Positions 5,900-56,595 of a DNA stretch of 64,000 nucleotides are shown piece by piece; the first letter of the stretch is position 1, and each line of letters begins with the position of its first letter. This stretch comes from Malacoraja senta (taxonomy: Eukaryota). Both the position numbers and the translations under genes were made by a program. Below the pieces are notes generated by a model, which was not told the origin of the DNA, ran no database searches, and saw only the letters and a list, made by a program, of their open reading frames with translations. The stretch lies in the NCBI GenBank assembly GCA_038087875.1, contig CM075977.1, forward strand, positions 361,398,001-361,462,000, read 5' to 3'.

Positions 5900-7503
5900 A
5901 ACCTCACCAGCTTTGTCAGTCTCGGGAGCGGATTACTGTGGCAGATGTAAGATTGGCCTTCCTGATACAGAAAGCAACTGGCCCGGATGGAGTCCCTGGC
6001 TGTGTTCTCAGGACTCGGGCGGCCAAGCTGGCAGAGGTACTCACGGACATTTTTAACCTCTCACTATTCCATTTTGAGGCCCCCACCTGCTTCAAGAAGA
6101 CCATTATCGCCTTAATAACTGTCATCCAGAGGCTCCACCATCCACCATAACATCCACCATCTGGAAGTACCTCGAGATTGGTGATGGCACACATTAACTC
6201 CAGCCTCCCAGCCAGCCTTGATCCACTGCAGTTTGCCCACTGCTGTAATAGGTCCACAGCAGACACCATCTCCCTGACTCTAAACTCATCTCAGGAACAC
6301 CTAGATAACATGGACATCATCATAATCATAATCATAATACTACTTTATTAGCCAAGTATGTTTTACAACTTATGGGTAATTTGATGTGCCATCTGACATC
6401 GAAGTTAGACTCCCTTCATCACCACAATCCTATCCAAACCCATCTCCAATCTCATGGAGCTAGATCAGCATACTCCTCTGCCACTGGAACCTTAACTTTC
6501 TGACCCACAGACCAATCAAACAGGATAGGTGACAACAAACCCTCTACAATAACTCGCAACTCTGATGCCCTGCAAGGATGCATTCTGAGTCCCCTATTAT
6601 GCTCCCTAAGCACTCATGACTCTGTGCCCAAATTTGGCTCCTACTACATTTGCAGATGACTCCACTGAGGTGGGCCGGATCATGAACAATGATGAGATGG
6701 AATACAGGAGGAAAATAGAGATCTTAATAACATTGTGTCAGGACAAGAACCTCTCCCTCAATGTCAGCAAGATAAAGGGGCTAGTTCTCGACTTCAGCGT
6801 GCATGGTGGAGGACATGTCTCAGTCAGCTTCACAGGTGCAGAAGTAGAAATGGTTGAGAGCTTCAAGTTCTTTGGCATCAATATTAGCCAAGGCACACCA
6901 ATGCCTTCACTTCTTCAGAAGACTGAGGAAATTCACTCTCACAAACTTCTATATGTGCACCACAGAAAGCATATGTTCGGGTTGAATCACAGCTTGGTTT
7001 GGAAACATCTCTGTCCAAGAACGCAAGAAATTGCAGTGTTGTGGATGTCGCCCAGTGCATCACACAGACCAGACTCCCCACCATTAACTCATCTACACTT
7101 CACACTGTTTCAGAAAAGCAGCCAATATAATCCAAAATTTGTCCCATCCTTCTTCTCCTTTGGGCAGAAGATACAGAAGCTTGAAAACACGCTCCACAAG
7201 ACTAAGGAACAGTTTATTCCCCTTTGTTATCATCCTTCTGAATGGTCCTCCCATAAGCTAGGTACTGTCCGATTCACCTCAATCCCATTGCTGACGTTAG
7301 CACCTGTCTCCAAAACTGGTACACTGCAATGCTGAGAAATATATTCTGCAATCTGTATAATTTCCTTTGCTTTGCATTGTCCGTCAGTTTGGTTTGATTG
7401 TATTTATGTATAGTATTATCTGATTCGATCGGATAGCATGCACTGCACCTTGGTACACATGATAATAGTACACCTAAACCTAAAGCCTAATCCTAAACCT
7501 AAA
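5900..7503 (+). mobile_element. Rex1/Babar LINE, decayed RT region through 3' tail
   Basis: KATGPDGVPGCVLR...LAEVLTDIFNLSL...PTCFKKT (ORF 5938..6150) and FADDSTEVGRIMNNDEMEYR (ORF 6616..7335); frameshifts; (CCTAAA)n-like tail at about 7472-7503; small nested minus-strand tail at about 6315-6400. Confidence 0.9.
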
Positions 7504-8842
7504 TGTTTGCTGGGCAAAGTCAATTTTCCATCATGTAATGCTGAAACAAAAGTGTTACCTGATGGAATTACTAGGCAATATTATGACATACATTATATGA
7601 TAATTACATGAGAAGAAGATTACCAGAAATTATTTATTGCATTTCTGCTGAAGTTCAGTGAGGAGGAGATTAAAGTGAACATGTCATGTCAGAAACGTTG
7701 GTTTAATAGACGAATGAATGATGCCACAAGATGGCAGAATGGGGTAAAGCGAATTTAGTATTTTCGCTTGCATGAGAGTTCAACAGGAAAAAATCTGTCA
7801 GTGTTTGAACGTTAAATACATGCAATTGGGGCCAATATTTGCATTGGTTGTTCATATGTTATTACCACTGAGGTTACTGTACTTCAGCTGAGTTGCAGAG
7901 ATTGCTGCAGGGCCCATGGTTCATTGGTTATCATTTAGATGGGCACATTAAGAAAGGGCACCCCAATCTTGCAGAGAAACTGATTAAATATTATGTCTGA
8001 TATCAATGTGCTTGTTTAAAAAAAAAATCAGTTCTGAAGGAAATTACACTTCTGCTCAAGGGTTGACCCAAATTTGCACTACCAAACCATTGCTGGTGAG
8101 GTTATGTCTTGTTTGGGTACAAATTCCAGCTGGCAACTCAAAATGTTTTAAAACATATATATAAATGAGCACAGAAAGAACTTTTCTGTGGGGTGTACTT
8201 TACTAACATTAATTTTAATATTAAAATAATAACATAGGTTAATATTTGTACTGGCAGGGAGATGCCTCCTTTCTCCACTTCATCTATTAATTCATAACAG
8301 AATTAGTTAGCCATTTGACAGGCGTTTTTTCACACCAAAGACACCAAACTTATTCATCGGATAAACCTCTATAATGATGACTATTTCTCTTAAAGAACTG
8401 CTGTCGGCCAAGTATCCTCAGCAACATTATCAATCACATTCTGTTACTACTGGCCAAATTAAAGACACCATAAAATGGAGGATCCCTGCATTTGTCAGAA
8501 TTACTTAACCCTTGTCAGCTGAAGTTTACAGGCTTTGGATGGCGCCAGCCAGTCTAGGCTCAGACTGCTATGCAGGATCCAGGTATTCTCCTTGTTTCTC
8601 CTAAATTGATAAAATGTATAGCAGTTTTGCAAACAAACCTTAAATGCATCATTTCGATTGGATCACTGCAAGGGCATTGTAAATAGTATAAATAATGTTG
8701 CGAGATGGTCATCCTGTTAATTGATGATTGGTCGAACTGTTGAGCCTTGGAGAAACTGTTTGAATCCCAGGGCACATGTAGCACTGTTTATTCTTGTTTG
8801 CTTCCTTCTAGAAGCTTCTTTCAAATACAATGTATTCAAAAT

Positions 8843-9228
8843 TGTATTATTGGGTTAGGGAACTGTCATTTATATACTGTTATTATCAACATGTTTAATT
8901 GGTTTATAAAGAGACCACCCCCATGTGGTTCAGCCCCTCAAGGTTCGGGGACCTGTAAAAAGTAGCTCCTACGAGGTCCGATGTCGATCTTCTGGAAGAA
9001 CGCTTGGGACTGCGTGACCTTTCGTAGTGTCTCTGCTTGCACGAGGCTAGAAGGACTTGGCCAAGCAGATACAAGGATCGAACCTGCGGTGGTTAGGTAT
9101 TGTATGGGGGAATTTGTGTTGTGTTATTCAAAATAAAGTTTAGTTGCTCAAGTGCTTGATTCAGTATTTTATTGACTGAAACTAGACAGGGGGGAGCTTA
9201 GAACGAGCTATTTGCACTTCGTAATACA
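8843..9228 (+). mobile_element. Probable solo LTR
   Basis: TGTATTA...TAATACA inverted termini, AATAAA about 95 bp from the 3' end, CpG-retaining; no TSD found, so the 5' boundary is uncertain. Confidence 0.5.
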
Positions 9229-9732
9229 TGGAATTTACAGCACAGAAGTGAACCAATAGGTCCACGTAATTGCTACTACTCCAGAGGAGACAATAGTGTT
9301 GAGCATAGGACTCTGTAGCAGTGAGAATGTTTAATGAACATTTTTTGCATTATTCAGTCTTATAGACTATCTGTGCATTAATGATGAGGCGCATTGTGGC
9401 CATCTTCCTCCACCCTTCCCTTAGTCCTGCGGTCAAAAGGCTCCGCTCATTGCAATAGTCAGTCACCCTTCTGCACGCCCAAGGATCTTGCAAATGGCAA
9501 TGAATGAGACCAAATTATTCGTCTCAGGTTGAGGGATGACAGGAATGTAAGTAAATTAGAAGAGTACAGATGGGTATCCCTCTGTATGGTTGAATAGAGA
9601 GAATGATTCACTTAATTCAAATATTGTGTGTAAAAAACATGAAGTAGTTGGACATCTGGAATAAAACCAGAAGAAAAAACCTCTGGAAAACATCAACAGG
9701 TCAGGTAGCATCTGGAGAAAAAGAAAGAGTAA

Positions 9733-10549
9733 AGGGGCTGTCCCAGTTGGGCGACTTAATCTGCGAGATTAGATGAGTGTCTTCGACCTTCAAACTCGCA
9801 GCATGGTAGACACGTGGTCCTAGGAGGTCCTATGAGGTCGCTGTATCTCTCCTTCATGCGCGAGGGATGTTCCCGAATACTCATGCCCTCAGCTAAGTCG
9901 CGGAAATTTCCACTAGTAAAATTTGGGTCGGCATGGTTCTTTTGAACTCGTATTGCAGTGGAGTGGGGTCGCTATTTAGTTACAGGCAGTCGAGGGCAGC
10001 CGTAGGCAATCTCCTTCGCTGACCGGGCATTTTAATTGGCTCAGTGGAGTTCTCAGGACCCAGGAAAACTGACCGGTAAGTAAAATGCCCGCCAAACTTT
10101 ATTATACTTCTTAAAAGTGTCTCCACTCCTTCTCTCCCCCCCCTCCACGCTCTCTAAAGGACTTACCTTACATTGTGGCAGCCGTTTACCTTCTTCTTCA
10201 TCGCGNNNNNNNNNNNNNNNNNNNNNNNNNNNNNNNNNNNNNNNNNNNNNNNNNNNNNNNNNNNNNNNNNNNNNNNNNNNNNNNNNNNNNNNNNNNNNNN
10301 NNNNNNNNNNNNNNNNNNNNNNNNNNNNNNNNNNNNNNNNNNNNNNNNNNNNNNNNNNNNNNNNNNNNNNNNNNNNNNNNNNNNNNNNNNNNNNNNNNNN
10401 NNNNNNNNNNNNNNNNNNNNNNNNNNNNCGCGGTTTCAACGCGGACGGTCGATCCAGCTCGCGTCTTTCCAGGCGAGTGTCCTCGAGTTTGAAGATCGAA
10501 GACACTCTTCTTAACTCGCGGATTAGGTCGCCCAAGTGGGACAGCCCCT
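9733..10549. mobile_element. PIF/Harbinger non-autonomous element (MITE), contains gap
   Basis: TIRs AGGGGCTGTCCCA(G/C)TTGGGCGAC...GTCGCCCAAGTGGGACAGCCCCT, flanked by TAA/TTA; sits within a Penelope-type short repeat. Confidence 0.85.
10206..10428. other. Assembly gap
   Basis: Run of N. Confidence 1.
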
Positions 10550-10661
10550 TTAATGATTCAGGTTCTGAAGCTCTTCAGGTTTCAGTCCTGAAACTAACTC
10601 TTCCTCTCTTCATACAGGTGCTGCCGAACTCATTTTCTGCTTTTCACCAGACAAGCATTCC

Positions 10662-11082
10662 TCACATGTTGAAACATTTTCTGCGACCAAAAATTGGTCG
10701 CCATGGAGAATGTCGATACTTTTGTTGTCGTAGGTGCAGTGGTAGTGGGGTCGCCATGTAGTTGTAGGTAGTCGAGGTAGCCAGAGGTAATTTTAGTTAA
10801 TCTCCTTTGCTGACCGGGCATTTTCATTGGCTCAATGGGGAAAGAAAACGTAAGCACGAGTTTTCAGAACCAAGGAAAACCGACCGGTAATGTTAAATGC
10901 CCGCCAACCTTCACACCTGTGTATCTCTGGCTTATTAAAAGTTGTCTGGCTTCTTAAAAGTGTCTCCACTCCTTCTCCCTTCCCCGCTCTTTTAAAGGAC
11001 TTACCGTACACTGTGCTAGCCGTCTTAACCTTCCTGTTCATCTGTATCACCTTGGCTTTGCACCATGTGAATTTCAGACAGT
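10662..11082. mobile_element. Internal fragment of a related Harbinger MITE, running into a gap
   Basis: Shares 'gctgaccgggcatttt..ttggctca' and 'gaccggtaa...aaatgcccgccaa' blocks with 10010-10200. Confidence 0.7.
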
Positions 11083-11307
11083 NNNNNNNNNNNNNNNNNN
11101 NNNNNNNNNNNNNNNNNNNNNNNNNNNNNNNNNNNNNNNNNNNNNNNNNNNNNNNNNNNNNNNNNNNNNNNNNNNNNNNNNNNNNNNNNNNNNNNNNNNN
11201 NNNNNNNNNNNNNNNNNNNNNNNNNNNNNNNNNNNNNNNNNNNNNNNNNNNNNNNNNNNNNNNNNNNNNNNNNNNNNNNNNNNNNNNNNNNNNNNNNNNN
11301 NNNNNNN
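11083..11307. other. Assembly gap
   Basis: Run of N. Confidence 1.
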
Positions 11308-11743
11308 TGATAGAATGAGTACTTTCCAGCACCATGCCTTCTATGTTGCTATAATTTATGAATAAACAATTGAATCATTACCTACTCTTCAATTTCTCAA
11401 TTTCTCAAAAGCAAAGATCTTTCTATTAATGAAGCTGAAGACCCATTAAAATGAAAAGCAGAATTGATTTCATAGTGAGGACCTCAGCTTTCAACACATG
11501 TGACAAATCAATTAATTGTCACAAATGTTAAGCTTGTTTTGAGTCTTCAATTGGTTTGGAAATTCTTTATCATTGGTATACAATATCATCGAGATTGAAT
11601 GGCTTCTACGAAGAATGGCGGGGAGTAAAATATTGAGCCATTCCCTCATTTTATATTGCTTCATTGCCACTTGTTCATTGAGTGTGGCTCCACATGGGAG
11701 TGAGATTTAAGAGACATGATATTCATCCAATATTGGTGAAGAG

Positions 11744-11908
11744 GACATCACGAGTTTACCAGATGTCCTGAGTACCTACCGTTAGCATTACGAGCCGCTA
11801 CGAGACATCCACGAACTCTTACGGACCCGCTATGGACATTCTCCGAGTTCGAATCCGGGGAAACCTCGGGAGAACGCTAGAATTACCTCATACAGTGGGA
11901 CAGGGGCT
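11744..11908. mobile_element. Harbinger MITE half copy (one TIR)
   Basis: Ends 'gaattacctcatacagtgggacaggggct', homologous to the end of 14357-14702. Confidence 0.75.
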
Positions 11909-13209
11909 TGGTGCACAGTTCATTTTATTAACAACCTCAAACTTCAAAATTAAAATAAAATCACATTAAAACTCTCCGGACTTTCATGGTGCCAGATGAG
12001 ATTTTTCCAGTCTATTGGATATTATTCTATCAATACTCCAATACACTACTAATTCACCCTTTCTATAAAGTTCTTACATGGTAACATAATAAATGTTACA
12101 GTAAATCCTGTAAGCTTAAAGGAAGTGTGGGGAACACAGCCCAGGTAAGTTTCAGAAGAGCATGGAAAATTTCAAGGGAGTAGTCAACAGAACCAAATGA
12201 GTTACAAGGCAATGTGGGAAATGCATTTCCAATGACTTTGATGGGACCATAGGAAATGAGGCGCCAATGATTTAGAAGAGAGCCCGGGAATCTGGTCCCC
12301 AGTTAACAAAAGGGCGAACAGGAGCCAAAACAGAAGCAGAACTCAATGAGCCAGATGCTGAACCACTGGGATTTTGGGATGTTTGGATGATAAATTATAC
12401 AGGTTTTAATGTATTGCAATGAAAGAAACAGAGAGACATTTGACTAATAATTGGGCAGAAACATCTAATAGTGAGAAAGATCTTGCATTTAAAAAAATTA
12501 TTCTGGTTTAGTGTAATGTTTTCAATTTTCACACTGTTTTTACGTGTTTTTGCTAAGATTTGCTGACATTTAAATTTTAAATATTAACTTTTAAAAAAAT
12601 GTTCTTCACTTTTTAATAACTTTGAGATGTCTCCCTTATAAACAGCTGAGGTGGTTGACAAAACTGTGGAGGTATTCAGGTGAGTATTTTGGCATCACCA
12701 ATACACCATAGGAAGCTCTGCTGGCACATTATAGCCATGCAATAATAGTGCTTGACAGCTCAGGCCAGGAAGATCGGCCATTCAGACAAGGTTAGTGTAG
12801 GGTGCTCGGCAAGATCCAACCCATTAGTTTTTTTTAATCAAATGGGCCTCAATACTATTTCTCATTCTTTCTTTAAGCTCCTTAGAGTTGAAATTATCAG
12901 TTATGTAAACATTTACATTAAAATATTATGCATTTTACAGCCCAGAATTTTTAGATTAAAACGTCTAAAAGATACCAGTGCAAATGCAATTAATAGTATG
13001 CTACATTGATCACTCTTTTTACAATACTGGGAATAATATCCTTTGGTGGCAAGCTTGTTGTAAGCATCAAGAACCATTTATGTGTTATCCCAAGCAAGTG
13101 TCTTCTACTGGTTTCAGAATGAGTATCAAACAAGAGCCGAAATCTTCATCAGTTTCAATTTCATGAGTTCTAAGGAACCAAATGAAATTTAAACCTTTGA
13201 TAGGTTTGA

Positions 13210-13658
13210 TATAGAAACATAAAATCATGGAAAATAGGTGCAGGAGTAGGCCATTCGGCCCTTCGAGCCAGCACCGCCATTCAATATGATCATGGCTGAT
13301 CAACATTCCAACATTCCCGTTTCTGCTTTCCCCCCATATGCCTTGATTCCGTTAGCCCTAAGAGCTAAATCTAACTCTCTCTTGAAAACATCCAGTGAAT
13401 TGGCCTCCACTGCCTTCTGTGGCAGAGAATTCCACAGATTTGCAACTCTCTGAGTGAAAAGGTTCTTCCTCATCTCAGTCCTAAATGGCCTACCCCTTAT
13501 TCTTAAACTGTGACCCCTGGTTCTGGACTCCCCTGACATCGGGAACATTTTTCCTGCATCTGGCCATTCCAATCCCTTAAGAATTTTATATGTTTCTATA
13601 AGATACCCTTTCATCCTTCTAAATTCCAGTGAATACAAGCCCGGTCGACCCATTCTTT
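13210..13658 (-). mobile_element. CR1 LINE 3' fragment
   Basis: ORF 13300..13653 GLYSLEFRRMKGYLIETYKILKG...FTQRVANLWNSLP; CATAGAAA-like tail. Confidence 0.92.
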
Positions 13659-14052
13659 CGGATATGGATATGTCCGGGATTTTATTCGAATCCCGTTAAA
13701 CAAAACACAAGTGGAATGCATTTTTGAAAAAAATAGGTTGCATTATCCAAAGCTCTTTAACATATTGCACCAGGGCATGCTCTAGGTTTTGCCGAGTTGC
13801 TGCTTTAATCCTTTCGGGCTTTGAATAGAATTTTTCTCTTTTCACTGGAGGTCAGCATAATTTCCTGGGATTCATATGGTGAGTGTACGTTACCCTCATT
13901 GAGTCTAAATTTTTAACATCTCCAGATTATTTTAATGAAACATCATATTTTCAATTTTAATTGTGAAAACATTTAAAGAATTGTTCACATTTTGGTCAAA
14001 ACTGAGCTTATCAATATTAAAGGCAACAAATTGACAGATCTGGAGCCAGAAA

Positions 14053-14313
14053 CATACAGCATGGAAACACAGGCCCTGGGCCCAGCAAGTCTACACCATC
14101 AAGCACCAATTTACATGCATCATGTACTAATTATATTTCATTAGAAATTGCCAAATTGCCTGTCTTTGGGATTGTGAGGAAAGTTCACCACCCAAAGGAA
14201 ACACACATGGCCATACAACTCCAATGACCCATGTGCAATCCTGAGCTCCACCTGAAAATCCACACAGGCAGCAGCGTGAGTAGTTAGCCGTAGTGCCACT
14301 ATCTCTGCGCTGC
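14053..14313 (-). mobile_element. Older HE1/V-SINE copy
   Basis: Degenerate match to other SINE copies ('atacagcatggaaaca...ggccc', 'gtgaggaaag', 'gccactatctctgcgc'). Confidence 0.6.
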
Positions 14314-14356
14314 CTGTTGATGCAAGAACATTTATCATTCTGATAGTGAACACTAA

Positions 14357-14702
14357 AGGGCATGTCCCACTGTAACCATAACCCTAACCCTAACCCTAAC
14401 CCTAACCCTAATTCAAGAGTTCTCCCGAGTTTCCCCTGATTCGAACTCGGAGAATTACGGTAATAGCCGCTCGTAGGTACTCGGGGCTCTCGTGGACATT
14501 TTTCAACATGTTTAAAAATCTTCACGAGTCTTCACGAGCTTACCGTGTTTCCCGAGTACCTGCCGTTAGCGTTACGAGCCGCTAAGAGATGTCCCGAGCT
14601 CCGACGTACCCGCTACGTACATTCTACGTGCTTACCACGAGTTTGATTTTTTTTTTAACTCGGGAGAGCTCTTGAATTACCTCGTACAGTGGGACTGGCC
14701 CT
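14357..14702. mobile_element. PIF/Harbinger MITE, complete, with a telomeric insert in the left TIR
   Basis: TAA|AGGGCATGTCCCACTGTA...TACAGTGGGACTGGCCCT|TAA; TIRs extend about 45 bp. Confidence 0.9.
14373..14411 (-). repeat. Interstitial telomeric repeat (TTAGGG)n
   Basis: TAACCA + (TAACCC)5 + TAA on the plus strand. Confidence 0.95.
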
Positions 14703-16079
14703 TAACAGCAAGGACACATGTTAAGGATTATCAACCCGGGTTAAAATGGGATTTTGGTGGAAGTTTTTTCAGCTGAGAGCTGGCAGTTTTATGAAGGGAC
14801 TAGAAAATGACAATATATTTCTCCAGGATGCAATTAGATACCATTTTGGAGGCTGAGGAGTTGAGGGATATGAAGAACTAGCAACCGCGATGCAGCTTTT
14901 ACAAGTAAGACTCTTGATGACTTTTCATCCACATGCCATCCTTACCATCCTTCCTACTTTACAGTTTTCCGCTAACTACCACCTAGCTCAGCTCAAAAAT
15001 AAAAGGACTGAGTATATGCTTTCCTATCTTTATATTAGTGGCTTGGTATTACATTGAGTGGTGTCTTTAGCCTTTGATCAAAGAAGCTTACCTAAATCTC
15101 TAATACTTATTAAACAAAGGATTCCAGTGAAATGAGTCTGCTTTGCTCATCACAGACTTACCTTGAACTGAAATTTCAGGTTTTGCTCAGGTATGGTCAA
15201 ACAGAACAGCTCAGCAAAATCAAATTCTTTGAACAATCAAATATTCATCCATTTTTACTTCAGTGAAGAAACACTGTGGCATTTTTCAAAGGGATTTATA
15301 ATAGAATTCTTCATTTTTGTTCCACATTTTATTTCTATTCTCCTTGATCATTATTCAGTATGAATACGTTTTGCCCAATGTAATTCCCAAAGATTTCATT
15401 TAAAAAATATAACACTGGTATCTAAAAAAGGAGTCTGATATTTAAAGGAGTTTTCAAGTATGCCATCGACATTTACATATATCCTAATACTCCCCAAGCT
15501 CCTCCAGGCATTGTGTCCTTATGCCACTATCTCAATCATATCTCTCATTATTACTTGATGTCTTTGGGATCTGTAATTAAAGTTCTGACAGTTTTGACAG
15601 CAAAAGGTCATTTATTTATCAATTGTTCGTCATATTCACAAATTCAATTAAAATAATATTTTAAATGCAATGTTGAAAGATTCCACATAGCCACGAGATT
15701 ACAATAACTGAAAATGATAAAGCATATTTTGCGTTGAGGATAGATGGTAAAGTAGATTTGTACATTGTCCTTTTACCACAGAGGTTTGGGGTTGATTCCA
15801 GTTTAATCTACATATGCGGAATATTCTTGAGGTGTTTGAGAGATGAGATAATGCACCATTTAAATGCAAGCTCTTCCTTTCAGATTTACAGGATGAGGGC
15901 GTCTTTTCTTCTTTGACAGTATTACAGGCATTTTAGTGGAATGAGTTTTGATGATATCAGCATGACAACCACTGGGCCCACAAAAGAGCCCACAATTCAA
16001 GGCCAAGTGCACAAATGAAAATAGTTGGCATTCCAAATTCTCTTTGGTGCAGCCTTTTGAGATAGAGAGTGAAGCAGAA

Positions 16080-16730
16080 TGTAGTCGCTGCCTCAAAAAG
16101 GCAGCCAAAATCATCAAAGACCCACACCATCATGGCCACACACACTCCCGACGCCGGAGTACCATCACCCGGCGAGAACGGCCAGGAACATCGGGCCTCC
16201 GTAGTGGCGAATGTGGAGGCCTCAATAGGCCCGACTATGGGTGGACATGGGGATGGGGACTGGACTTTGTGCCTTCCCCCACAGTGGGAACCATTGTGGG
16301 GGGATGTTTTTATGTTTAATGTTAAACTTCTTAATGCTATGTTGTATTTTTATTAGTGTGCTGCAAGGACATCAGAATTTCCCCTGAATAAGGGGATTAA
16401 TAAAGTAAAAATCAATCAAATCAAATCAAAAATCATTTCACCATTGCCATCGGGAAGAAGGTACAGGAGCCTGAAAACTGTAACGTCCAGGTTCAGGAAC
16501 AGCTTCTTCCCTACAGCCACCAGGCTATTAAACACAACAACAAATAAGCTCTTAGCTCTGAACTGCAAAAGTCTATATTATTACTGCACTATATTTGATA
16601 TTTATTGAACTTTTTTTCTCTTCCCCCATTATGTAAGATGTTTACATATTCACATATTCTGTTGTGCTGCAGCAAGTAAGAATTTCACTGTCCCATCGGG
16701 ACATATGACAATAAAACACTCTTGACTCTT
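16080..16730 (+). mobile_element. Rex1/Babar 3' end with a nested GC-rich retroposon 3' end (about 16150-16430)
   Basis: RCLKKAAKIIKDPHHHGH, continuing after the insert as 'ttgccatcgggaagaaggtacaggagcc'; the insert ends 'aatttcccc...ggggattaataaagta(aatca)n'. Confidence 0.8.
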
Positions 16731-17939
16731 GAACTGGGTGCAGAAGTTCATCTTCCAGTTGACTTTGAACACTCAGAGTTGACATTGAATACACGTTGTC
16801 TCCTGTTCCATTGGCCAGTGCTAACATCTTTCACTTAGTTGAGTACAAATTTCATTCAATAAAATTAATTTGAAAATATTCCAGAAATAAAAACCTAAAT
16901 ATTGGCTAAAATGTCTTCATACTGGGAAGTGAATGCTTAAAATCTGACACATCGCACTGACATCAGCCCATTTATATTCATTTGTGGGTCAAATTAATAT
17001 TAAAATATCTAATGGAGACAATTGATGCGCATTTTCATTATTAGTGAAAATGGTACTAGTTTTGCCCTGCTTCTGCATTTTTGTGGCAGAAATTTGAAAG
17101 TTCATGCCTACTTTAATATTTGGAATGATATGGCAGTGCCCTGTTCACAAGGTAGAACGCTGCATCTTCCTTTGTCAGGCATCAATAAGTTTAAAACTTT
17201 TAGTCCATTTTTGATAAGAGGTATGCTAAATATACAAAAAGAAATTCTATCTATCTTTATCCCTTATTTTTGTAATCTTCTCTCAGTTCCATGCATCACT
17301 CCACACGGTAATCTGCTGTCAGGCAAATATAAAGCTTTTCTTTAAATGGCCACTAGGAAATTGTTTAGTTTGACGTACCTTGCTTTGATGCCTCAGCAAA
17401 GATTGCATGTATGGTTGAGTGTGGGCAGTCGTCTGTGTTTACCTCGGATGAAAATAAAGTCGACCTTTTGATATTTATAGATTAAAAAAGGATATACATC
17501 GAAGTCTTATGGCATTGCACTGCATTGCATTGCACTCAGATAATCCGTTTTCCCTTTTGATCTCAATGATATTAAAGGAAGGATTTGTTTTTCCTTCTTT
17601 GAATACTGCAATGGAATTATTGACAGCCATCTAAGAGGACAGATAGATGATAACGTGTCATCTTTCAGTGCTGCATGATGGAGGTACCATACAAACAAGG
17701 CCTGTGTGATGTCTGGAGCTTTTGTACAATTCTCTGACTCGAGTGCATCACCTCAAAATCACACAATCACTCCTATGTAAAAGGACAAAGGCGGCAAATG
17801 AACACTCTCACCACAACCCAGAAGTTCCCTAAGTTATGCACTGTCCTGACCTGGAGATATACGGCCATATTTTCAAAGTCTCTTGGTCTAGATGGTGCAA
17901 CTTATTGCCTGACTCCACCACACAAATTGCACAATTACC

Positions 17940-18205
17940 TCAGGTGTGGTGGAGTTTGCACTTTCTTCCTGTATCCACAGGGCTTTCTCTTAGGTGCAAT
18001 GCTTTCCTTTAATATCTCAAATACATTCTGTTTTGTGGATTAACTGGCTACAGTAAGTTATCCTTAGTGTAGATGATTGGTAGGAGAATCGGCGTGCAAA
18101 TGATGGGCATGTGAGTGAGAAGAGTTCACAGGAAAATAAATGGGGGAGTCAGATTGATATAATTGTTTTGAGAGCTGACATTAACTCGATGGGCTGAATG
18201 GCTTC
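17940..18205 (+). mobile_element. Old V-SINE fragment
   Basis: 'ggagtttgcac...ctcttaggtgc..gctttcct...aactggcta.agtaagtt' V-domain-like; 3' 'gatgggctgaatggcttcc'. Confidence 0.55.
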
Positions 18206-19989
18206 CTTCAATGTTGCAAGAATAAACGATGAAATAAGTTTGGAGAAGTTGCCGTTAAAAGGTGTCTCATTTGATTTTCAACTTCTATTGGTTCAACACG
18301 GTCAGGGAAGATTCAGGATAATAACATTTATAACCACACACAAGTGCAAGGGTCAAGAAATAATAACAATGCTCGATTTTAGTTACCGAGCTGGACCTGT
18401 GCCAGACAACATATAAAGGAAGTTACATGACATGAACATAGTCTGGAGGTATGACTAAATTTGACAACGAGGCTAACAATTGATGGCAATCACTTGGATA
18501 AGGCCAGGAGTGTTCTCAGTAACGAGACATCACAGGTCAGTATGAGGCAGTATTAGAACAAAAAGGTGAGTACTGGGAGAAAAGAAAAAAAAAACATTGC
18601 GGGGATATAAAGCTTTAACTGAGAACTATAATGGTTAGAAAAATCAAGTCATCACTGATCGATAATGACATCGTTTTTCTGTGTAAAACAGCAACTGCAG
18701 TTCCTTGTATCACCAGTGACAAAATTAATCTTCTGGAAATATGTCAAAGAGATGCAGTAATGTTCTCTTCAATTAATCCATCTTGTACTTCTGCTTCCAC
18801 TTTCTTGCATATCTACTTGATGTGGTGTGAAAATTGAAATAAAATAAAATAAAACATTAATAAACAACTCTAAGACCATTTATCGATAGACTGACATGCA
18901 TATCCCCTGACTTTAAATATGCTGCTAAGTGCCTTGAATGGAGGTATGTGCGTTCACGAGACAATGGCACAATTGCTCAGGGTTAAAGCTGACATCCCTC
19001 CTGTGGATCATGATCCCTATTTTGTCACTGCTTATTGGAGAGAGGCTGACTGTAAAGAAAGGGCAAGTGAACATCTTTATAGAGGAACTAATCCCATGAC
19101 ACACTGAACTGCAGGGGATGAGCATGGCTGGTAATTCACACCATTCATACAGAGGAGATTGGAAAAAGGGACAAACATCAAATTAATTCCACCTTTTGCT
19201 CTGGTCTGATGTGACGGTTGAATGAGATGGGGTTTAATCTAGTTGTGCAACTTGAGCATCAAGAGGCTAATGTAAAAAGTCAATTCCCATAATTCCTTGG
19301 CGTTCCCGAGAAATGCAATTTAAGCTTGTCCATACAAGGCTTCTAGATTTCATAAGGTCAATTTTATTTTTAAAATGTCACCCACACGGAAATGTTTGAG
19401 GCTTTCATTGTCAAGCCGTATGCTGATGCTCATCCTGCCTATGAATAAATAACTAGCTAAATAAATGCAAGTACTGCTCTTGCCCTGTGCCTTCTAATTT
19501 GAACATCTATCCTGTCTGTACATATATTTGTCCCGGCAGAAAGTGGAATACTTGCTTGGGTATTAGGAGTGTAATCTATATTATCCATTTTCTTCAGATG
19601 AGCTTATAAACCTGGGTTTTAGAATTTTATTTAACACTTCAAAAAAATATTTTTCTGCAACAATTATAATGCTGGGGGAATCAAACTTTTTAATGATGTG
19701 GGGCTCAAAAGCACCAATATTGTTTTGGATTCAGGAAAATATATTTTGGGCAGTAGAGTATTCGGGTGGGAGTCTGAGTTTCCCACATACCTTGCCAAAT
19801 TTAACAGCAACTTTTTCAAGAGATTTTCTTTTCCCTTGACAACCATCCAGATTGACAACCTGTCTGTCTGCTGTGCTGGAAAGTGGCAGGGAGGCTGTGT
19901 TTGAGTAATTCTTACTTTCTGAGCCAGGTTAGACATCAAAGGTCAGAGGGAGATGAGATGCTCAGAAAATATAGGATGATGCACGAACG

Positions 19990-24164: not shown

Positions 24165-25218
24165 CCTGAAGGCCAAGAGCAAAGCCAGTAACACCGCCAT
24201 CATGGAGCTTTAGTACGTGGACGACTGCGCCATTGCAGCACACTCTGCAGAAGACCTCCAGGGCATCCTGAATGCCTTTGCCAAGGCATACAGAGCCATT
24301 GGCCTAGCCTTAAATATCAAGAAGACCCAGGTCTTACATCAATCTACACCCAACCAGCCGCCTACCCAGCCTACTATAAAAGTGGACGACACCACTCTTG
24401 AAAACGTTGACCACTTCCCCAACCTTGGCAGCATTCTTTCCTCAAAAGCTGACATCGACTCTGAGGTCAAACATCGCCTGAGTTGTGCCAGCGGAGCCTA
24501 CGCCGGACTCAGGAAAAGAGTCTTTGAAGACCGAGACCTGAAGGCTCAACAAAACTGCTGGTCTACAGAGCCGTTGTCCTCTCCACCTTGTTGTATGGAG
24601 CCGAGTCATGGACCACCTACAGCAGGCACCTGAGAGCCCTGGAACAATACCATCAAAGATCCTTACGAAAGATTCTGAGGATCAGCTGGGAGGACAAACG
24701 CACTAACATCAGCATTTTGGAGGAAGCCAACGTGACCAGCATCACCACCACAATAATGCAGCACCAACTTCGCTGGACTGGCCATGTCATCCGCACGTCC
24801 AACACACGTCTCCCTATACAAATCCTATACTCTCAATTGAAGGAAGGTCGGCGAGCCCCCGGCGGGCCAAAGAAATGCTTCAAGGACAACATCAAGAACA
24901 GTCTGAAGAAATTCCACATCACATCGAGCAAATGGGAACACATTGCATTTGACAGGCGGTCCTGGAGGAAATCCGTGCAGGAAGGAGCTGCACGTCACGA
25001 AATGGAACTACGCCGTGTCGCAGAGACAAAGCGACAGCACCGTAAGGAGAGAGAGAAGGAGGCTCGACGACTACCAACCACCGCCAGTCTCCACTGCCCA
25101 CTTTGCACCAAGGTGTGTGGATCGTGGATTGGCCTCTACAAACATCTGCAGACCCACAACTAGACGACCCTATGGAGAGGACGGTCATACTCGTTTCGAG
25201 TGACCGCCGATGATGACA
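24165..25218 (+). mobile_element. RTE-clade LINE, 5'-truncated (RT C-terminus plus C2H2 zinc finger)
   Basis: EL*YVDDCA (YADD box), GLALNIKKTQVL, FPNLGS, LYGAESWT, QLRWTGHVIR, CPLCTKVCGSWIGLYKHLQTH; one stop and one frameshift near 24550; 3' hairpin plus (GAT)n tail. Confidence 0.93.
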
Positions 25219-33255: not shown

Positions 33256-33515
33256 TAATGTTACAGAATATTCAGCCTCTGACCTTTTCTCAGCATAGTT
33301 TATAGATCGAGAGCCTGAGTGCCTCGTTTTTAGGGTCCTTACCCAAAACGTCAATTTTCCATGTTCTCCAGGTGCCTGATGCTGGATGCTGCCTGATCCG
33401 CTGAGTTACTCCAGCACTTTGTGCCTTTTTATAGTTTGCAGGTAACTGGTGTACTTAGGATAATGATCAATTCTGACACCCAGGACATCAGAAAAGGGAC
33501 ATTTGGTTTGGGTAT

Positions 33516-34648
33516 TGTAGATCAAACAGTATTGCTGACTGAATCCGTGACTGGTTTTGTCTGCATAGACCTCCGCCAGATTGAATCAAATAAGACCATG
33601 GTTCCGGACACAACTCATTGACCGTGCCCATATGGTCATATCCCTCCTGGGTTTGGAGACGGACCACCTGGCCCTCCGACAGTGGTTGGAGAGGACAACT
33701 AGAACGATCGTAGTACGCCTTCTCCGTCTGTCTTTTACGCTGCAGACGCGCCCGAACCACCTTGGGCTCGCAGACTTGTGGCTGGAGCAGCTGCTTCGCG
33801 ACTGGAAGAGTAGTCCTGGTCTGTCTCGACATGATTCGCTGAGCCGGCGAACCGAGTGTGGGATCACGTGGAATGTTGCGGAGATTGAGAAGATCCCAAA
33901 ACACGTCAGACCCGGCCCTGCTGGACCTCTCCATGAGCTCCTTTGCACTGCGGACAGCTCGCTCAGCCAGCCCGTTCCACTGGGGGTACCCGGGACTGCT
34001 GGTGATGTGCCTAAAATCCCATTCCTTTGCAAAGTCCTTGAAATGCTGGCTTGTGAATTGGCCACCATTGTCAGGCATGAGGGTTTGAGGTACCCCATGG
34101 ACCGAAAAATGCCTCGCAAGTTTCTTGACGACCGCTGCAGATCGATCTCAAACCACCAGGAGTAAGAGTCAACCAGGACCAAGTATTGGTTGCCATGCCA
34201 GTCGAAAATGTCAGTAGCCACCATAGACCACGGCAAGTCAGGAACCGGGTGCTGCAAAAGGAGCTCTTTCTGTTGATGTGGAGCCATGCTGTTGCACACA
34301 ACACAGGACTGCACCCTCTAGTGTATATAATCTGACATGGCAGGCCAGAAAAACATGCTCTTTGCTCGTTGCACCGTAGCTTCTGAACCAGGATGACCTT
34401 CGTGTACGGGGTCAAAGTACTTCTGTTGGAGTGAAGCCGGAATCACTGCCTTGTGGCCCTTTTTGATAACCCCACCTTCATTGTTGGGGGGGCCAGGTGG
34501 TTCGTCTCCAAACCCAGAAGGAGTATGAACGTATGGGCACGGTCAAGGAGGTGTGTCCAGAACCAAGGTCTTATTTGGTTCAATCTGGCAGCGGTCTATA
34601 CGGACAAAACCAGTCACGGATCAAGTCAGCAATACTGCTTGATCTACA
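33516..34648 (-). mobile_element. Gypsy-type integrase pseudogene bracketed by 160-bp inverted repeats (Ginger-like architecture)
   Basis: VHEGHPG...SCVVC zinc motif, VATDIF, PDNGGQF-35 aa-GLAERAV across frameshifted ORFs; IRs 33516-33675 and 34489-34648 (about 141/160 identical, no indels). Confidence 0.85.
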
Positions 34649-53492: not shown

Positions 53493-54149
53493 CAGTAAAC
53501 CCTTGTTATAATGAACCATGGGGCGGGGGGGGGGGGGGGGAGGAATGGTGTCCGTTATTGCCGATTGTCCACTATAACCGAGTACGGTATTATCATTGTA
53601 CAAGTCGTAAAAACAAACAAATGCAGTTGTTGGTTAATATATAAAAAGGGCACAAAGTCCAAGAATAACTCAGCAGGTCAGGCAGCATCTCCGGAGAACA
53701 TGGATAGGAGACGGTACCCTTCTTCAGATTCTCAGACCAGAACTAGACCTGGAATCCAGGTGAGTTAAGGGCTCCGGCCTGTTGACAGCTGGGGGCATGG
53801 ATCGTCGTGTCAATGGTCACGGACTGTGGTTGGCAGGAGTGCTGGTAAGGATCGCGGTGGAGGCGGCGGCAGGCATGGCCTGGAAGCAGATGAGGAAGCT
53901 GTGTGGACCGGCATTGGCTGCAGTAGGTCCAGCCTGGAAGCAGCCGGAAAGACGGAGTGAGCCGGTGCAGGAAGCCTGGCCGGGAAGCGGCTGGAGAGAC
54001 TGTGCGAGCCGGGGGTGGTGTGGGAAGCCTGGCCAGGAAGAGGCCGGGGAGGCGGTGTGAGCCAGGAGTGACTTCGGCAAACATCCGTTGGTCCGTCCGC
54101 AATAACTGAAATCCATTATAAAGAGATCCATTAAAACAAGGGTTTACAG
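53493..54149. mobile_element. Tigger/pogo-like non-autonomous DNA transposon with a nested Penelope piece (about 53620-53730)
   Basis: TA|CAGTAAACCCTTGTTATAATGAACC...GATCCATTAAAACAAGGGTTTACAG|TA (21/25 identical); GC-rich interior. Confidence 0.85.
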
Positions 54150-54569
54150 TACTGTGTTTTAATGTTGGGAATGCAAAGTTTTGATGCCACTTGCAGTTTG
54201 CGTGCAAATTGGCTACCTGGCATGAAAGTTGGGCTCGCAAATCTCCCAAAGAATTAATGTTTCTACTCACCTCATGTTGTACTTGGGAGAAGCCTGGATC
54301 TAGGAATCGGTGGGATCCAAGGCCAGGTCCTTTTGATATGTCTCTTCACTGACTTGCAAACAGTTGTAAGGCTGGGGCCTCAGAGAAAAGCAGTCCCTAT
54401 TTTGTTATGTTACGAGTGATAGAATGACACTTAGTACAAGCAAAGTCTCAGTCAAGTTCTGGATCTGAAGCGGGATTGGGATTGTGGGGAAAATGGACCA
54501 GGGCAATGAAGTTAATGTAGCGAGTCCCTGCTACCACCCACCAAGTAGCCTGGGAAATGCTGGTTCCTT

Positions 54570-54708
54570 TTTCTTCTTCTTTCGTGTGGCGTGCACAGCC
54601 TAAAGTTGTTGGACAACTTGTTCTATTTGATCTTCCGTTTGTGCACGTCGAGTTGATTGCATTAGTCGAAACAGGGCGGACCACGTGAATGTTGCAATCT
54701 TCCACCCC
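54570..54708 (-). mobile_element. 139-bp non-autonomous retroposon (Ingi/Vingi-like 3' end) with 5' ribozyme
   Basis: 10-bp TSD CTGGTTCCTT/CTGGGTCCTT (54560-54569, 54709-54718); 3' end GCCACACGAAAGAAGAAGAAA. Confidence 0.8.
54655..54708 (-). ncRNA. Minimal HDV-like self-cleaving ribozyme (predicted)
   Basis: GGGGUGG AA GAUUGCA ACA UUCACGU GGU CCGCCCU GU UUCG A C UAA UGCAAUC: 7-bp P1 with G1.U wobble, perfect 7-bp P2, P3 with one mismatch, L3 UUCACGU, J4/2 CUAA. Confidence 0.82.
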
Positions 54709-56595
54709 CTGGGTCCTTATTTCATGTAAAAGATGAATATCCATATCTGAACAAGAACAGGATGTCAGAATACTCGTAGTATATAGTATTTAGTGTGTAT
54801 ATATATTTTTAAAAATCTTCAAATTCTTTTGATCTTAATAAGAACAAATACATGTGATAAGTACTGACCTTCTCTGAACAGAGATTAGCCAAGAAGTGAA
54901 GAATCAAAAATTTATAAACACTTATTGAGGACATAAAGTCTTACCCCCATCCCGAAGCATTCACTAGTAATGCTTAGGGTAGGGTATTGGTAAAGCTCAA
55001 CAAAATCTGCTCCAGTTTGTAATAAGGATCATCAATAGTTATATACAATGAATTTCTCTTATCAGGAATTAGCTCTTAATCAGATTTACTGCTTTTCACT
55101 TTTGCAATGTTATTGATCCTGAATGTGTTGCTCCCATGTGGGATAAATTGCTCTTCAGCCGCTTGCCATAAATACATTGTTTGGTATTAAATCATGTGTC
55201 AAATTTAATATTGAATCCAATAACCTTGTGTCTGCCAACTTTTAAAATGGTCCATTTATACACAGGTAGTTTCCAGAGCTGGCACAAGGAGAGAAGTTTG
55301 CCTTTATTGTTCAATGCCTCTTACCAATGCCAAATCCTACTACTCATTCCTTTGGACAATATGGCAGCGACGAAAGGAACTTTTAAGTTCTGTTTTAAGG
55401 TTTTTTTTCCTTTTAAAGATTTGGTATACAGTATTGTTACACTGAAGGCTTGTTCAGTTTAAACACTGTTAATATAATAATTGCAGTGTTGATATGTGTA
55501 CTGAGCCATTGATAAGTTTGCCAGATACGTAAGCGACATTTTAGAACAAAGTGTCAAAATGAAGCCATGTTTCTATTTTGCTTAAAAACCTTGACAAGAG
55601 GTCTTCAAGTTGAAACATTAACTCTCTTTCCCTTTTATATGGTTGCTCTCTGATTTGCCGAATGTTTGCAGCATTTCCTGGCTTTGCTCCAGGTATTCAG
55701 CATTGCGGGTTTTGACTTTCAAGTTCCTTCCTCATCATAGTCCCTCACCTCCCAATCATGAGAACACCTCCAGCCCACTAGCTTGTAACAGCATTATTAT
55801 AAAGAGTTTTATCCACGGTGATATACAATAAGCATGTGTTATTGAGATGTGGGCATTGGAAAGATGCTTCTGAAATTTTCGTCAATGGAACTAAATTTCA
55901 AAAAAAAATATTCTGAGCATATCAAGAGATGGCAAATTCCTACTGTGAATTTCTGAGCAGGCCAATTTTCTGTTCCTCTTCATTGGTGGTTAGACTTTTT
56001 TTTAAACCATCATTATTACATAAACTGGGATTTTCTGCCTAAATCCCAAAAACCTACCTCTCTGTGCAAACATTTGATTACCTGCCTTAATGTATCTTTT
56101 GTCATTTTGGCCTCAGGACATTTTACCATATTAAAGAAAACATAGAGAAGCAAGTTGGGAAAGGATGGGGCAGCCCCAAAATAAAAATAATATCTTGCAA
56201 TAAAGCTAATGTCAGTGAACTTTCAAGTAGGTTAGCCCTGAAACATTGGAAATAAACAAATTGTAAATTAATCAGTGCACAAATGACAAAAAACACTGAT
56301 TACATGATTATGGGGTGAATTAGGTCTATATTCATGGAAAAGCTAGTTATTGGATTAGTGAAGACCAAAAGGCATATGAGAATAATAGGTCAATAGATAA
56401 TGACAATCGCAGTCTTTTAAAAGACTGTTAGGAAGCAAAAGAAAATTAAAAATGTAAAGGAAGGACATAAGAGATTTTTCAAAGGATTTTGAAAGTAATG
56501 AAATAAAACAGGAATTAATGAATGAGTAAATTCTAGAGATGAAGGAATTTCATTAGCAACAGAATGAAAGGATATAAGAAGACAAGGTAGACAAA

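What the first reader, a model, noticed from the sequence alone, without database searches (positions are those of the whole stretch)
54570..54708. Ribozyme-headed mini-retroposon: a minimal HDV-like ribozyme defines the exact 5' end of a 139-bp element
Seen: the minus strand 54708-54655 reads GGGGUGG-AA-GAUUGCA-ACA-UUCACGU-GGU-CCGCCCU-GU-UUCG-A-C-UAA-UGCAAUC. P1 GGGGUGG/CCGCCCU is 7 bp opening with G.U; P2 GAUUGCA/UGCAAUC is perfect; P3 ACA/GGU has one A.G mismatch; P4 is reduced to a UUCG loop; a C sits at the catalytic position before UAA. A 10-bp TSD (one mismatch) abuts G1 exactly, and the other end is an (AAG)n tail. There are no Pol III boxes and no RT ORF. Established: HDV-like ribozymes cleave immediately 5' of the P1 G and process the 5' ends of R2, RTE and L1Tc/Ingi retrotransposons. 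Inference: this is a promoterless SINE-like family released from host read-through transcripts by self-cleavage and mobilised by an Ingi/Vingi-type LINE. I cannot tell whether it is already described in chondrichthyans.
Basis: partly seen in the sequence, partly recalled or inferred. Interest (0 to 1): 0.92.

Follow-up and report, generated by a model that had tools for sequence, protein, structure and literature searches.

The report
Ribozyme-headed mini retroposon, mutated copy
This 139-base stretch is one slightly damaged copy of a very abundant cartilaginous-fish jumping element whose first 54 bases fit a stripped-down HDV/CPEB3-type self-cutting RNA, and RNA from a related species does start exactly at its first base.

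Summary
Minus strand 54708-54570 is a 139-bp retroposon flanked by a 10-bp target-site duplication. Contigs of two related species carry the empty site with a single copy of the duplicated 10-mer. The family is very abundant (7,500-18,800 contigs laid per run) in at least 11 coded organisms. Its DNA 5' ends pile up exactly at G54708.

The first 54 nt fit a P4-less HDV-like double pseudoknot. No common variant breaks P1, P2 or P3. The only Rfam family that matches is the CPEB3 ribozyme, at 15.3 bits, well below its threshold. The layout matches the biochemically active minimal ribozyme drz-Mtgn-1 almost segment for segment.

In two oligo-dT RNA libraries of a relative, about 265 reads each join the template-switch oligo directly to G1. 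This places RNA 5' ends at the predicted cut site, while about 75% of boundary reads run through from unrelated flanks.

Cleavage chemistry and the partner LINE were not tested here. The design is a known one (NARTc, R2 SIDEs, RTE derivatives) in a new minimal vertebrate form. The scan noted this family many times elsewhere in this genome.

The parts
54709..54718 (-). Upstream copy of the target-site duplication, AAGGACCCAG. The C at 54713 differs from the other copy.
   Evidence: The empty-site contigs of organisms B and D read AAGGA|ACCAG across the joint (tables 5 and 8).
54655..54708 (-). 54-nt P4-less HDV/CPEB3-type ribozyme fold. The predicted cut is immediately 5' of G54708.
54702..54708 (-). 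P1 5' strand, GGGGUGG (e1-7). G1 pairs with U36 as a wobble.
   Evidence: Variation is below 8% in four runs.
54693..54699 (-). P2 5' strand, GAUUGCA (e10-16). It is preceded by J1/2, AA (54700-54701). e8 is A or G in the family.
54690..54692 (-). P3 5' strand, ACA (e17-19). A19 (54690) is private to this copy. About 99% of family depth has C, giving ACC/GGU.
   Evidence: table 3, place 54690 T>G. The P1+P3 energy is -9.3 kcal/mol for this copy and -12.4 for the consensus.
54683..54689 (-). L3, UUCACGU (e20-26). It is identical to L3 of the Rfam CPEB3 ribozyme consensus.
   Evidence: Alignment.
54673..54682 (-). P3 3' strand GGU (e27-29) followed by P1 3' strand CCGCCCU (e30-36). The family variant G32A turns U5.G32 into U5-A32.
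54662..54672 (-). G37-U38 (P1.1 partner), the 5-nt linker UUCGA in place of P4, the candidate catalytic C44 (54665), and J4/2 UAA. The family variant U45G gives CGAA, as in the CPEB3 consensus.
   Evidence: The same layout is seen in drz-Mtgn-1.
54655..54661 (-). P2 3' strand, UGCAAUC (e48-54).
   Evidence: Variation is below 8%.
54584..54654 (-). 3' domain (e55-125). It has a long-range stem, e62-69 with e112-119, that encloses a 7-bp hairpin, e90-96 with e100-106, with loop CCA. It is a LINE-tail-like recognition structure and carries most of the subfamily variation.
   Evidence: Folds.
54570..54583 (-). (GAA)n-type microsatellite tail. Its length varies among copies.
   Evidence: Loose ends lie at 54567, 54571, 54572 and 54573.
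54560..54569 (-). Downstream copy of the target-site duplication, AAGGAACCAG.

Best explanation
The stretch is one recent insertion of a very abundant ORF-less, LINE-dependent retroposon, a bipartite non-autonomous LINE derivative. It has three parts: a 54-nt P4-less HDV/CPEB3-type self-cleaving ribozyme, a structured LINE-type 3' domain, and a (GAA)n tail.

Shown:
- It is an insertion, with a TSD and an empty site in relatives.
- The family is very large, and its DNA 5' boundary is sharp at G1.
- The family consensus has perfect P1, P2 and P3.
- Copies are transcribed together with their flanks.
- In a relative, many RNA molecules begin exactly at G1.

Inferred:
- Copies have no promoter of their own and are carried in host read-through transcripts.
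- The ribozyme cuts immediately 5' of G1 and so creates the exact 5' end that the family inherits.
- A partner LINE recognises the 3' stem-loop and tail and reverse-transcribes the RNA into a new site by target-primed reverse transcription.
- This copy has C19A, which removes one of the three P3 pairs, so it is probably impaired.
For: Insertion: contigs of organisms B and D skip 54565-54713 (149 = 139 + 10) and keep one TSD copy (tables 5 and 8, records 17 and 24).

Family: 7,501-18,796 contigs were laid per run. Summed depth over the element is 1e6-7e6, against 22-70 in the flanks. Loose ends with random flank consensus sit at 54708. Eleven coded organisms hold 80-100% of the sampled words.

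Fold:
- The descriptor hits only here in the window, against 0.3 expected per random window.
- Place 54690 reads G in about 99% of family depth, which restores C19-G27.
- The only sites in e1-54 with 8% or more variation are e8, e41, e42 and e45, all unpaired, and e32 (G>A), which keeps its pair with U5.
- The only Rfam match is RF00622, CPEB3 ribozyme, aligned over the full model with an identical L3.
- The segments match drz-Mtgn-1 in order: P1, 2-nt J1/2, P2, 3-bp P3, 7-nt L3 (UUCCCGU there, UUCACGU here), G+N, a 5-6-nt linker, C-UAA, P2 (sequence from PMC10879173). That paper states that minimal drzs lack P4 and are active in vitro.

RNA ends: in X40 and X41, 264 and 271 reads carry loose letters behind 54709. 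Their reverse complement is TGGTATCAACGCAGAGTACATGG, which is the Smart-seq template-switch oligo and not the oligo-dT primer. ACAT followed by 7 G equals the oligo's GGG plus the element's GGGG, so the template ended at G1. Another 837 and 738 reads run on into unrelated flanks.
Against: - No cleavage assay was done, and the chemistry of the 5' end (5'-OH or cap) is unknown.
- The CPEB3 model score of 15.3 bits is far below its gathering score of 35. The match was not reported when 5 kb was searched.
- Nested-fold energy is no better than shuffles.
- Within-family covariation cannot be assessed, because the paired positions are nearly invariant.
- About 75% of boundary-spanning RNA reads are uncut.
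- The reads joined to the template-switch oligo could come from a few highly expressed loci.
- The RNA data are from organism H, not the window's organism, and are family-level, not for this locus.
- No partner LINE was seen here.
Confidence: 0.78

Rival explanations
1. The retroposon is real, but its 5' end is a transcription start. An internal promoter or initiator in the head, as in the Pr77 element of L1Tc, makes RNAs begin at G1. The HDV-like fold is vestigial or coincidental.
For: Reads joined to the template-switch oligo show only that RNAs end at G1, not how the end is made. In L1Tc/NARTc the same 77 nt act as both promoter and ribozyme (PMC3383444). Most boundary reads are uncut.
Against: No Pol III boxes and no tRNA, 5S or 7SL similarity were found. 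The chance of the complete fold starting on that exact base is about 2e-6. L3 is identical to that of CPEB3. All common variants spare the helices. A dual promoter-plus-ribozyme role is not excluded.
Confidence: 0.1
2. The head is kept because the partner LINE's protein or the translation and retrotransposition machinery binds the LINE's 5' end. It is a structural signal, and the ribozyme is no longer catalytic in this minimal form.
For: Kojima 2018 (PMC5786205) notes that bipartite non-autonomous LINEs keep the LINE 5' ends and leaves the reason open. P1.1 here would have a U.U mismatch next to one C-G pair, and P4 is absent.
Against: P4-less drzs of nearly the same layout cleave in vitro. 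RNA ends lie exactly at G1. The candidate catalytic C44 shows less than 8% variation.
Confidence: 0.08
3. It is an ordinary Pol III SINE or a retropseudogene of a small RNA, with a head that has diverged beyond recognition.
For: Its size, copy number, TSD and LINE-type tail are SINE-like.
Against: ARAGORN finds nothing. The best A-box and B-box matches have 3 or more mismatches. Rfam gives no small-RNA match at E<=10.
Confidence: 0.03

Closest known systems
Minimal (P4-less) HDV-like ribozymes: drz-Mtgn-1 and phage theta ribozymes (Riccitelli 2014, cited in Kienbeck 2024, PMC10879173)
   Same: The order and sizes of the segments are the same. P1 opens with G.U, J1/2 is 2 nt, P3 is 3 bp, and L3 is 7 nt of the form UUCNCGU. 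G follows P1, a 5-6-nt linker replaces P4, and the catalytic C is followed by UAA and then the P2 3' strand.
   Different: Those ribozymes come from gut phages or metagenomes and sit next to tRNAs. This one heads a vertebrate retroposon. Here P1 and P2 are 7 bp rather than 6, and the base after G37 is U (as in CPEB3) rather than A.
Mammalian CPEB3 ribozyme (Rfam RF00622)
   Same: It is the only Rfam family that matches. GGGG at the start of P1, L3 UUCACGU, and CCCU-GU after P3 are identical. A subfamily has J4/2 CGAA.
   Different: It scores 15.3 bits against a gathering score of 35. The 18-nt P4 is replaced by a few bases, and P2 is unrelated. CPEB3 is a single-copy intronic element of mammals, whereas this is a high-copy retroposon head in cartilaginous fishes.
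Ribozyme-headed non-autonomous LINE derivatives: NARTc/RIME (L1Tc/Ingi), R2 SIDEs, and bipartite RTE and Vingi derivatives (PMC3383444, PMC3414825, PMC5786205)
   Same: The design is an ORF-less element made of a LINE 5' end plus a LINE 3' end. The 5' end is generated from a co-transcript by an HDV-like ribozyme.
   Different: This element is much smaller (139 nt) and has a P4-less ribozyme. It is dispersed at very high copy number in a vertebrate. Its partner LINE was not identified here. Vingi is not among the six ribozyme-bearing clades listed in PMC5786205.

Membership tests
HDV-like self-cleaving ribozymes | Nested double pseudoknot: P1 (6-7 bp), P2 and a 3-bp P3, with the P3 3' strand directly abutting the P1 3' strand | tested here: met
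   In this copy P3 has 2 of 3 pairs. In the family consensus it has 3 of 3.
HDV-like self-cleaving ribozymes | Cleavage site immediately 5' of a G that forms a G.U wobble closing P1 | tested here: met
   G1.U36 is present. The family's DNA 5' ends and RNA 5' ends in organism H lie at G1. How the RNA end is produced is not shown.
HDV-like self-cleaving ribozymes | Catalytic C at the first position of J4/2, three bases before the P2 3' strand | tested here: met
   C44-UAA-P2. Variation at e44 is below 8%. The cmscan alignment instead placed C41 under the model's C, so the assignment rests on geometry and on the match to drz-Mtgn-1.
HDV-like self-cleaving ribozymes | L3/P1.1: a C in L3 pairs with the G that follows P1 | tested here: met
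   C22 can pair with G37. L3 is identical to the CPEB3 consensus. The second P1.1 position would be U.U.
HDV-like self-cleaving ribozymes | Mg-dependent self-scission that is abolished by a C-to-U change at the catalytic C | not testable with these tools
   This needs a bench assay.
Mammalian CPEB3 ribozyme (RF00622) | Score at or above Rfam's gathering threshold, with P4 present | tested here: not met
   15.3 bits against 35, with the 18 P4 positions replaced by 2. It is CPEB3-like in its core but is not a member.
Minimal P4-less HDV-like ribozymes | All core elements present, with P4 replaced by a short loop | tested here: met
   Segment-by-segment match to drz-Mtgn-1. The definition is from PMC10879173.
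Non-autonomous LINE-dependent retroposon (bipartite, ORF-less) | TSD, precise empty site, many dispersed copies with a common 5' end, and a microsatellite tail | tested here: met
Non-autonomous LINE-dependent retroposon (bipartite, ORF-less) | An autonomous LINE that shares the 3' end (and the 5' end) | not tested
   None is in this window. No eukaryotic genome collection could be searched. Unchecked notes elsewhere in the genome name a Vingi-like LINE.
Canonical SINE (Pol III head) | A tRNA-, 7SL- or 5S-derived head with internal A and B boxes | tested here: not met

The most novel reading that the evidence does not exclude
CPEB3-type ribozyme cores (GGGG..., L3 UUCACGU, ...CCCU-GU, C-G/U-AA) circulated in vertebrate retroposons or LINEs long before mammals arose. 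The single-copy mammalian CPEB3 intronic ribozyme would then be an exapted retroposon head. In cartilaginous fishes, tens of thousands of such heads would still cut host transcripts in vivo.
Probability: 0.2. Interest if true: 0.85.

Novelty: new variant of a known kind. Interest (0 to 1): 0.62.

Why it matters
Minimal P4-less HDV-like ribozymes have so far been placed in phages and metagenomes, and PMC10879173 calls the function of minimal variants poorly understood. Here the same minimal design heads a vertebrate retroposon present at very high copy number in many species, and public RNA data place RNA 5' ends at the predicted cut site.

It gives a compact natural example of how a promoterless element can define its own 5' end. 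It puts a CPEB3-like catalytic core outside mammals, which makes the origin of the CPEB3 ribozyme testable. It also implies that thousands of intronic or UTR copies could cut host transcripts.

Tried and rejected
- Rfam over 5 kb gave no ribozyme hit. Only the 74-nt targeted scan found CPEB3.
- Nested MFE z-scores were uninformative.
- No second copy exists in the window.
- I tried to fetch other copies for covariation. A metagenome scan and a viral scan with a 3'-hairpin 19/20-mer returned only a marine phage gene that shares 20-35 nt by chance. Two genome-contig scans and a second viral scan found nothing.
- The route to cartilaginous-fish DNA through homologs of the window's integrase ORF gave two skate loci (Amblyraja, Leucoraja; 41 kb in all) with no copy. 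That is too little sequence to say the family is absent from skates.
- The only RT fragment in the window (24217-25163) ends in an unrelated 3' region, so it is rejected as the partner.
- Strand invasion by the template-switch oligo at the GGGG was considered and rejected. It would leave about 4 G between ACAT and TGG, not the 7 observed.
- RT stalling was rejected because it would stop 3' of the structure, not at G1.

Full report
**What is there.** Immediately upstream lies AAGGACCCAG (54718-54709), and immediately downstream lies AAGGAACCAG (54569-54560). The element ends in GAAAGAAGAAGAAA. In what follows, e is the position in the element, with place = 54709 - e.

**It is a retroposon insertion.** I laid Logan contigs of four runs on 53900-55400.
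- Contigs of organisms B and D cover both flanks at about 94-97% identity. They skip 54565-54713, which is 149 bases, i.e. 139 plus 10.
- Across the joint they read AAGGA|ACCAG, a single copy of the duplicated 10-mer. This is a precise empty site. It also shows that the C at 54713 is a later change in one TSD copy.
- Over the element, 7,957-18,796 contigs per run align at 80% likeness or more. Summed depth is 2-7 million, against 22-70 in the flanks.
- Hundreds of contigs per run leave the alignment exactly at 54708 and run into flanks with no consensus (agreement about 0.35).
- The other end scatters over 54567-54573, which reflects variable tail length.

A second call confirmed these points in another species. 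Eleven coded organisms hold 80-100% of the sampled words of this copy. This copy differs from the family majority at only about five positions (e19, e99, e127, e139, and about half the family at e123). That fits an insertion younger than the 4-5.5% flank divergence from B and D.

**It is not a Pol III SINE.** ARAGORN finds nothing. The best A-box and B-box matches have three or more mismatches. Rfam gives no small-RNA match.

**The fold.** The first 54 nt divide as follows.

| Segment | Positions | Sequence |
|---|---|---|
| P1 5' strand | e1-7 | GGGGUGG |
| J1/2 | e8-9 | AA |
| P2 5' strand | e10-16 | GAUUGCA |
| P3 5' strand | e17-19 | ACA |
| L3 | e20-26 | UUCACGU |
| P3 3' strand | e27-29 | GGU |
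| P1 3' strand | e30-36 | CCGCCCU |
| P1.1 partner | e37-38 | GU |
| Linker in place of P4 | e39-43 | UUCGA |
| Candidate catalytic C | e44 | C |
| J4/2 | e45-47 | UAA |
| P2 3' strand | e48-54 | UGCAAUC |

- I wrote a generic HDV-like descriptor with these requirements: a 7-bp P1 opening with G.U; P2 of 6 bp or more abutting P3; P3 with at most one mismatch; L3 of 6-9 nt; a 2-bp P1.1; and a C four bases before the P2 3' strand. No L3 sequence was required.
- The descriptor hits only this site on both strands of the window. It hits 0.3 sites per random window with the same dinucleotide content.
- The fold alone would therefore not be remarkable. Starting on the one base that the TSD, the empty site and the family boundary define independently, it has a chance of about 2e-6.
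- Nested-only folding is no better than shuffles. P2 appears in the MFE structure and P1 in the centroid, as expected for two helices that cross in a pseudoknot.

**Family consensus.** One search lists every position where 8% or more of family depth differs from this copy in any of four runs (two DNA, two RNA).
- Place 54690 reads G in about 99% of depth in all four. The family therefore has C19, and P3 is the perfect ACC/GGU.
- A19 is private to this copy. It costs about 3 kcal/mol in the P1+P3 substructure.
- The other variable sites within e1-54 are e8 (J1/2), e41 and e42 (linker, a CpG), and e45 (J4/2). The e45 U>G variant gives CGAA, as in the CPEB3 consensus.
- The last variable site is e32 (G>A), which turns U5.G32 into U5-A32 and keeps the pair.
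- No common variant breaks P1, P2 or P3.
- The 3' part carries 15 such variable sites.
- Because the helices are nearly invariant, covariation within this family cannot be read.

**Comparison with known ribozymes.** A scan of 74 nt against all 4,227 Rfam models returned one match. It was the mammalian CPEB3 ribozyme, over the full model length, at 15.3 bits and E = 0.045.
- GGGG, L3 UUCACGU and CCCUGU are identical to the model consensus. The 18 P4 positions are replaced by two bases.
- The score is far below the family's gathering score of 35, and the match was not reported in the 5-kb scan. The head is CPEB3-like in its core but is not a member of that family.
- PMC10879173 states that minimal HDV-like ribozymes lack P4. 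It reports in vitro activity and C-to-U inactivation for such ribozymes, and it gives the sequence of drz-Mtgn-1.
- drz-Mtgn-1 parses into the same segments in the same order: a 6-bp P1 opening with G.U, a 2-nt J1/2, a 6-bp P2, a 3-bp P3, L3 UUCCCGU, G+A, a 6-nt linker, C-UAA, and P2.
- This match and the geometry favour C44 as the catalytic base, rather than the C41 that cmscan placed under the model's C.

**RNA evidence.** I laid raw reads of two oligo-dT RNA-seq runs of organism H, X40 and X41, on the element.
- 837 and 738 reads cross 54708 into unrelated sequence. Copies are therefore transcribed as part of longer transcripts, and most are uncut.
- A separate class of 264 and 271 reads has loose letters behind 54709 with a clear consensus. 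Its reverse complement is TGGTATCAACGCAGAGTACATGG.
- That sequence is the Smart-seq template-switch oligo (…GAGTACATrGrG+G). It is not the oligo-dT primer (…GAGTACT30VN) (PMC8579666).
- Between ACAT and TGG there are seven G: two loose, one aligned to the G at 54709, and four at 54708-54705. Seven equals the oligo's three G plus the element's four, so the cDNA template ended at G1.
- Strand invasion at the GGGG would leave about four G. RT stalling would stop 3' of the structure, not at G1.
- About a quarter of boundary reads in two libraries therefore mark RNA 5' ends at the predicted cleavage site.
- Caveats: the reads are family-level and from another species; they could come from few loci; and they cannot tell a ribozyme cut from a transcription start.

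**Mechanism.** The most likely reading is a promoterless bipartite non-autonomous LINE derivative. It is carried in host transcripts, trimmed at its 5' end by its own minimal ribozyme, and copied by a LINE that recognises the 3' stem-loop (e90-106, inside the e62-69/e112-119 stem) and the (GAA)n tail.
- How the 3' end of the RNA is made is unknown. RNA reads also run through the tail.
- The partner LINE could not be tested. Nothing in the window shares either end, and the only RT fragment has an unrelated 3' region.

**Relation to what is known.** Ribozyme-headed ORF-less derivatives are established for L1Tc/NARTc and R2 SIDEs. Kojima 2018 lists RTE, Ingi, Vingi and R2 as the clades that produce bipartite non-autonomous LINEs. 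It lists six clades with 5' ribozymes, and Vingi is not among them. My searches found no paper on a shark or CPEB3-like ribozyme retroposon. I therefore class this as a new variant of a known kind.

**Earlier notes from this scan.** The scan has noted the same family many times elsewhere in this genome. Three or more notes were followed up, with the same reading. Those notes also name a Vingi-like LINE that begins with a CPEB3-type ribozyme. I could not check that claim.

Noticed in passing
window 53970-54154: A second repeat family lies next to the element. Summed contig depth is 1e4-2e4 over 54104-54154 in three species. A GC-rich 53-bp unit is repeated 1.9 times at 53970-54070. A 175-aa ORF at 53743-54270 (-) has no Pfam hit.
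   Followed up: no
window 24217-25163 (+): A LINE ORF2 fragment. It matches the C-terminal part of RVT_1 (E = 6e-5), followed by a short zinc-knuckle-like end (weak Zn_SUZ12 hit). Its 3' region is unrelated to the mini-retroposon.
   Followed up: partly
window 33488-34078 (-): A fragment of an rve integrase core. The best database homologs (60-66% identity) are mostly teleost K02A2.6-like proteins. Only two skate proteins appear, further down the list.
   Followed up: partly
L001-L020 (marine metagenome and IMG/VR contigs): A 20-mer of the element's 3' hairpin occurs by chance in a conserved marine phage gene. The shared stretch extends to about 35 nt at 89-91% identity, but there is no other similarity to the element.
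   Followed up: yes
window 54570-54708 (runs X21-X23): Words of this copy also occur in two metatranscriptome runs and one wastewater RNA run, at shares of 0.04-0.09 of the 901-base stretch. X21 holds 0.80 of the element's own words. The source of that material is unknown.
   Followed up: no
window 54634-54639 (family indel variants): A large subfamily lacks about 8 nt (ACGGAAGA, e71-78) of this copy. It is seen as loose ends at 54634 in all runs (agreement 0.64-0.82). Another variant has a GA insertion behind 54638.
   Followed up: partly
   Followed up: no
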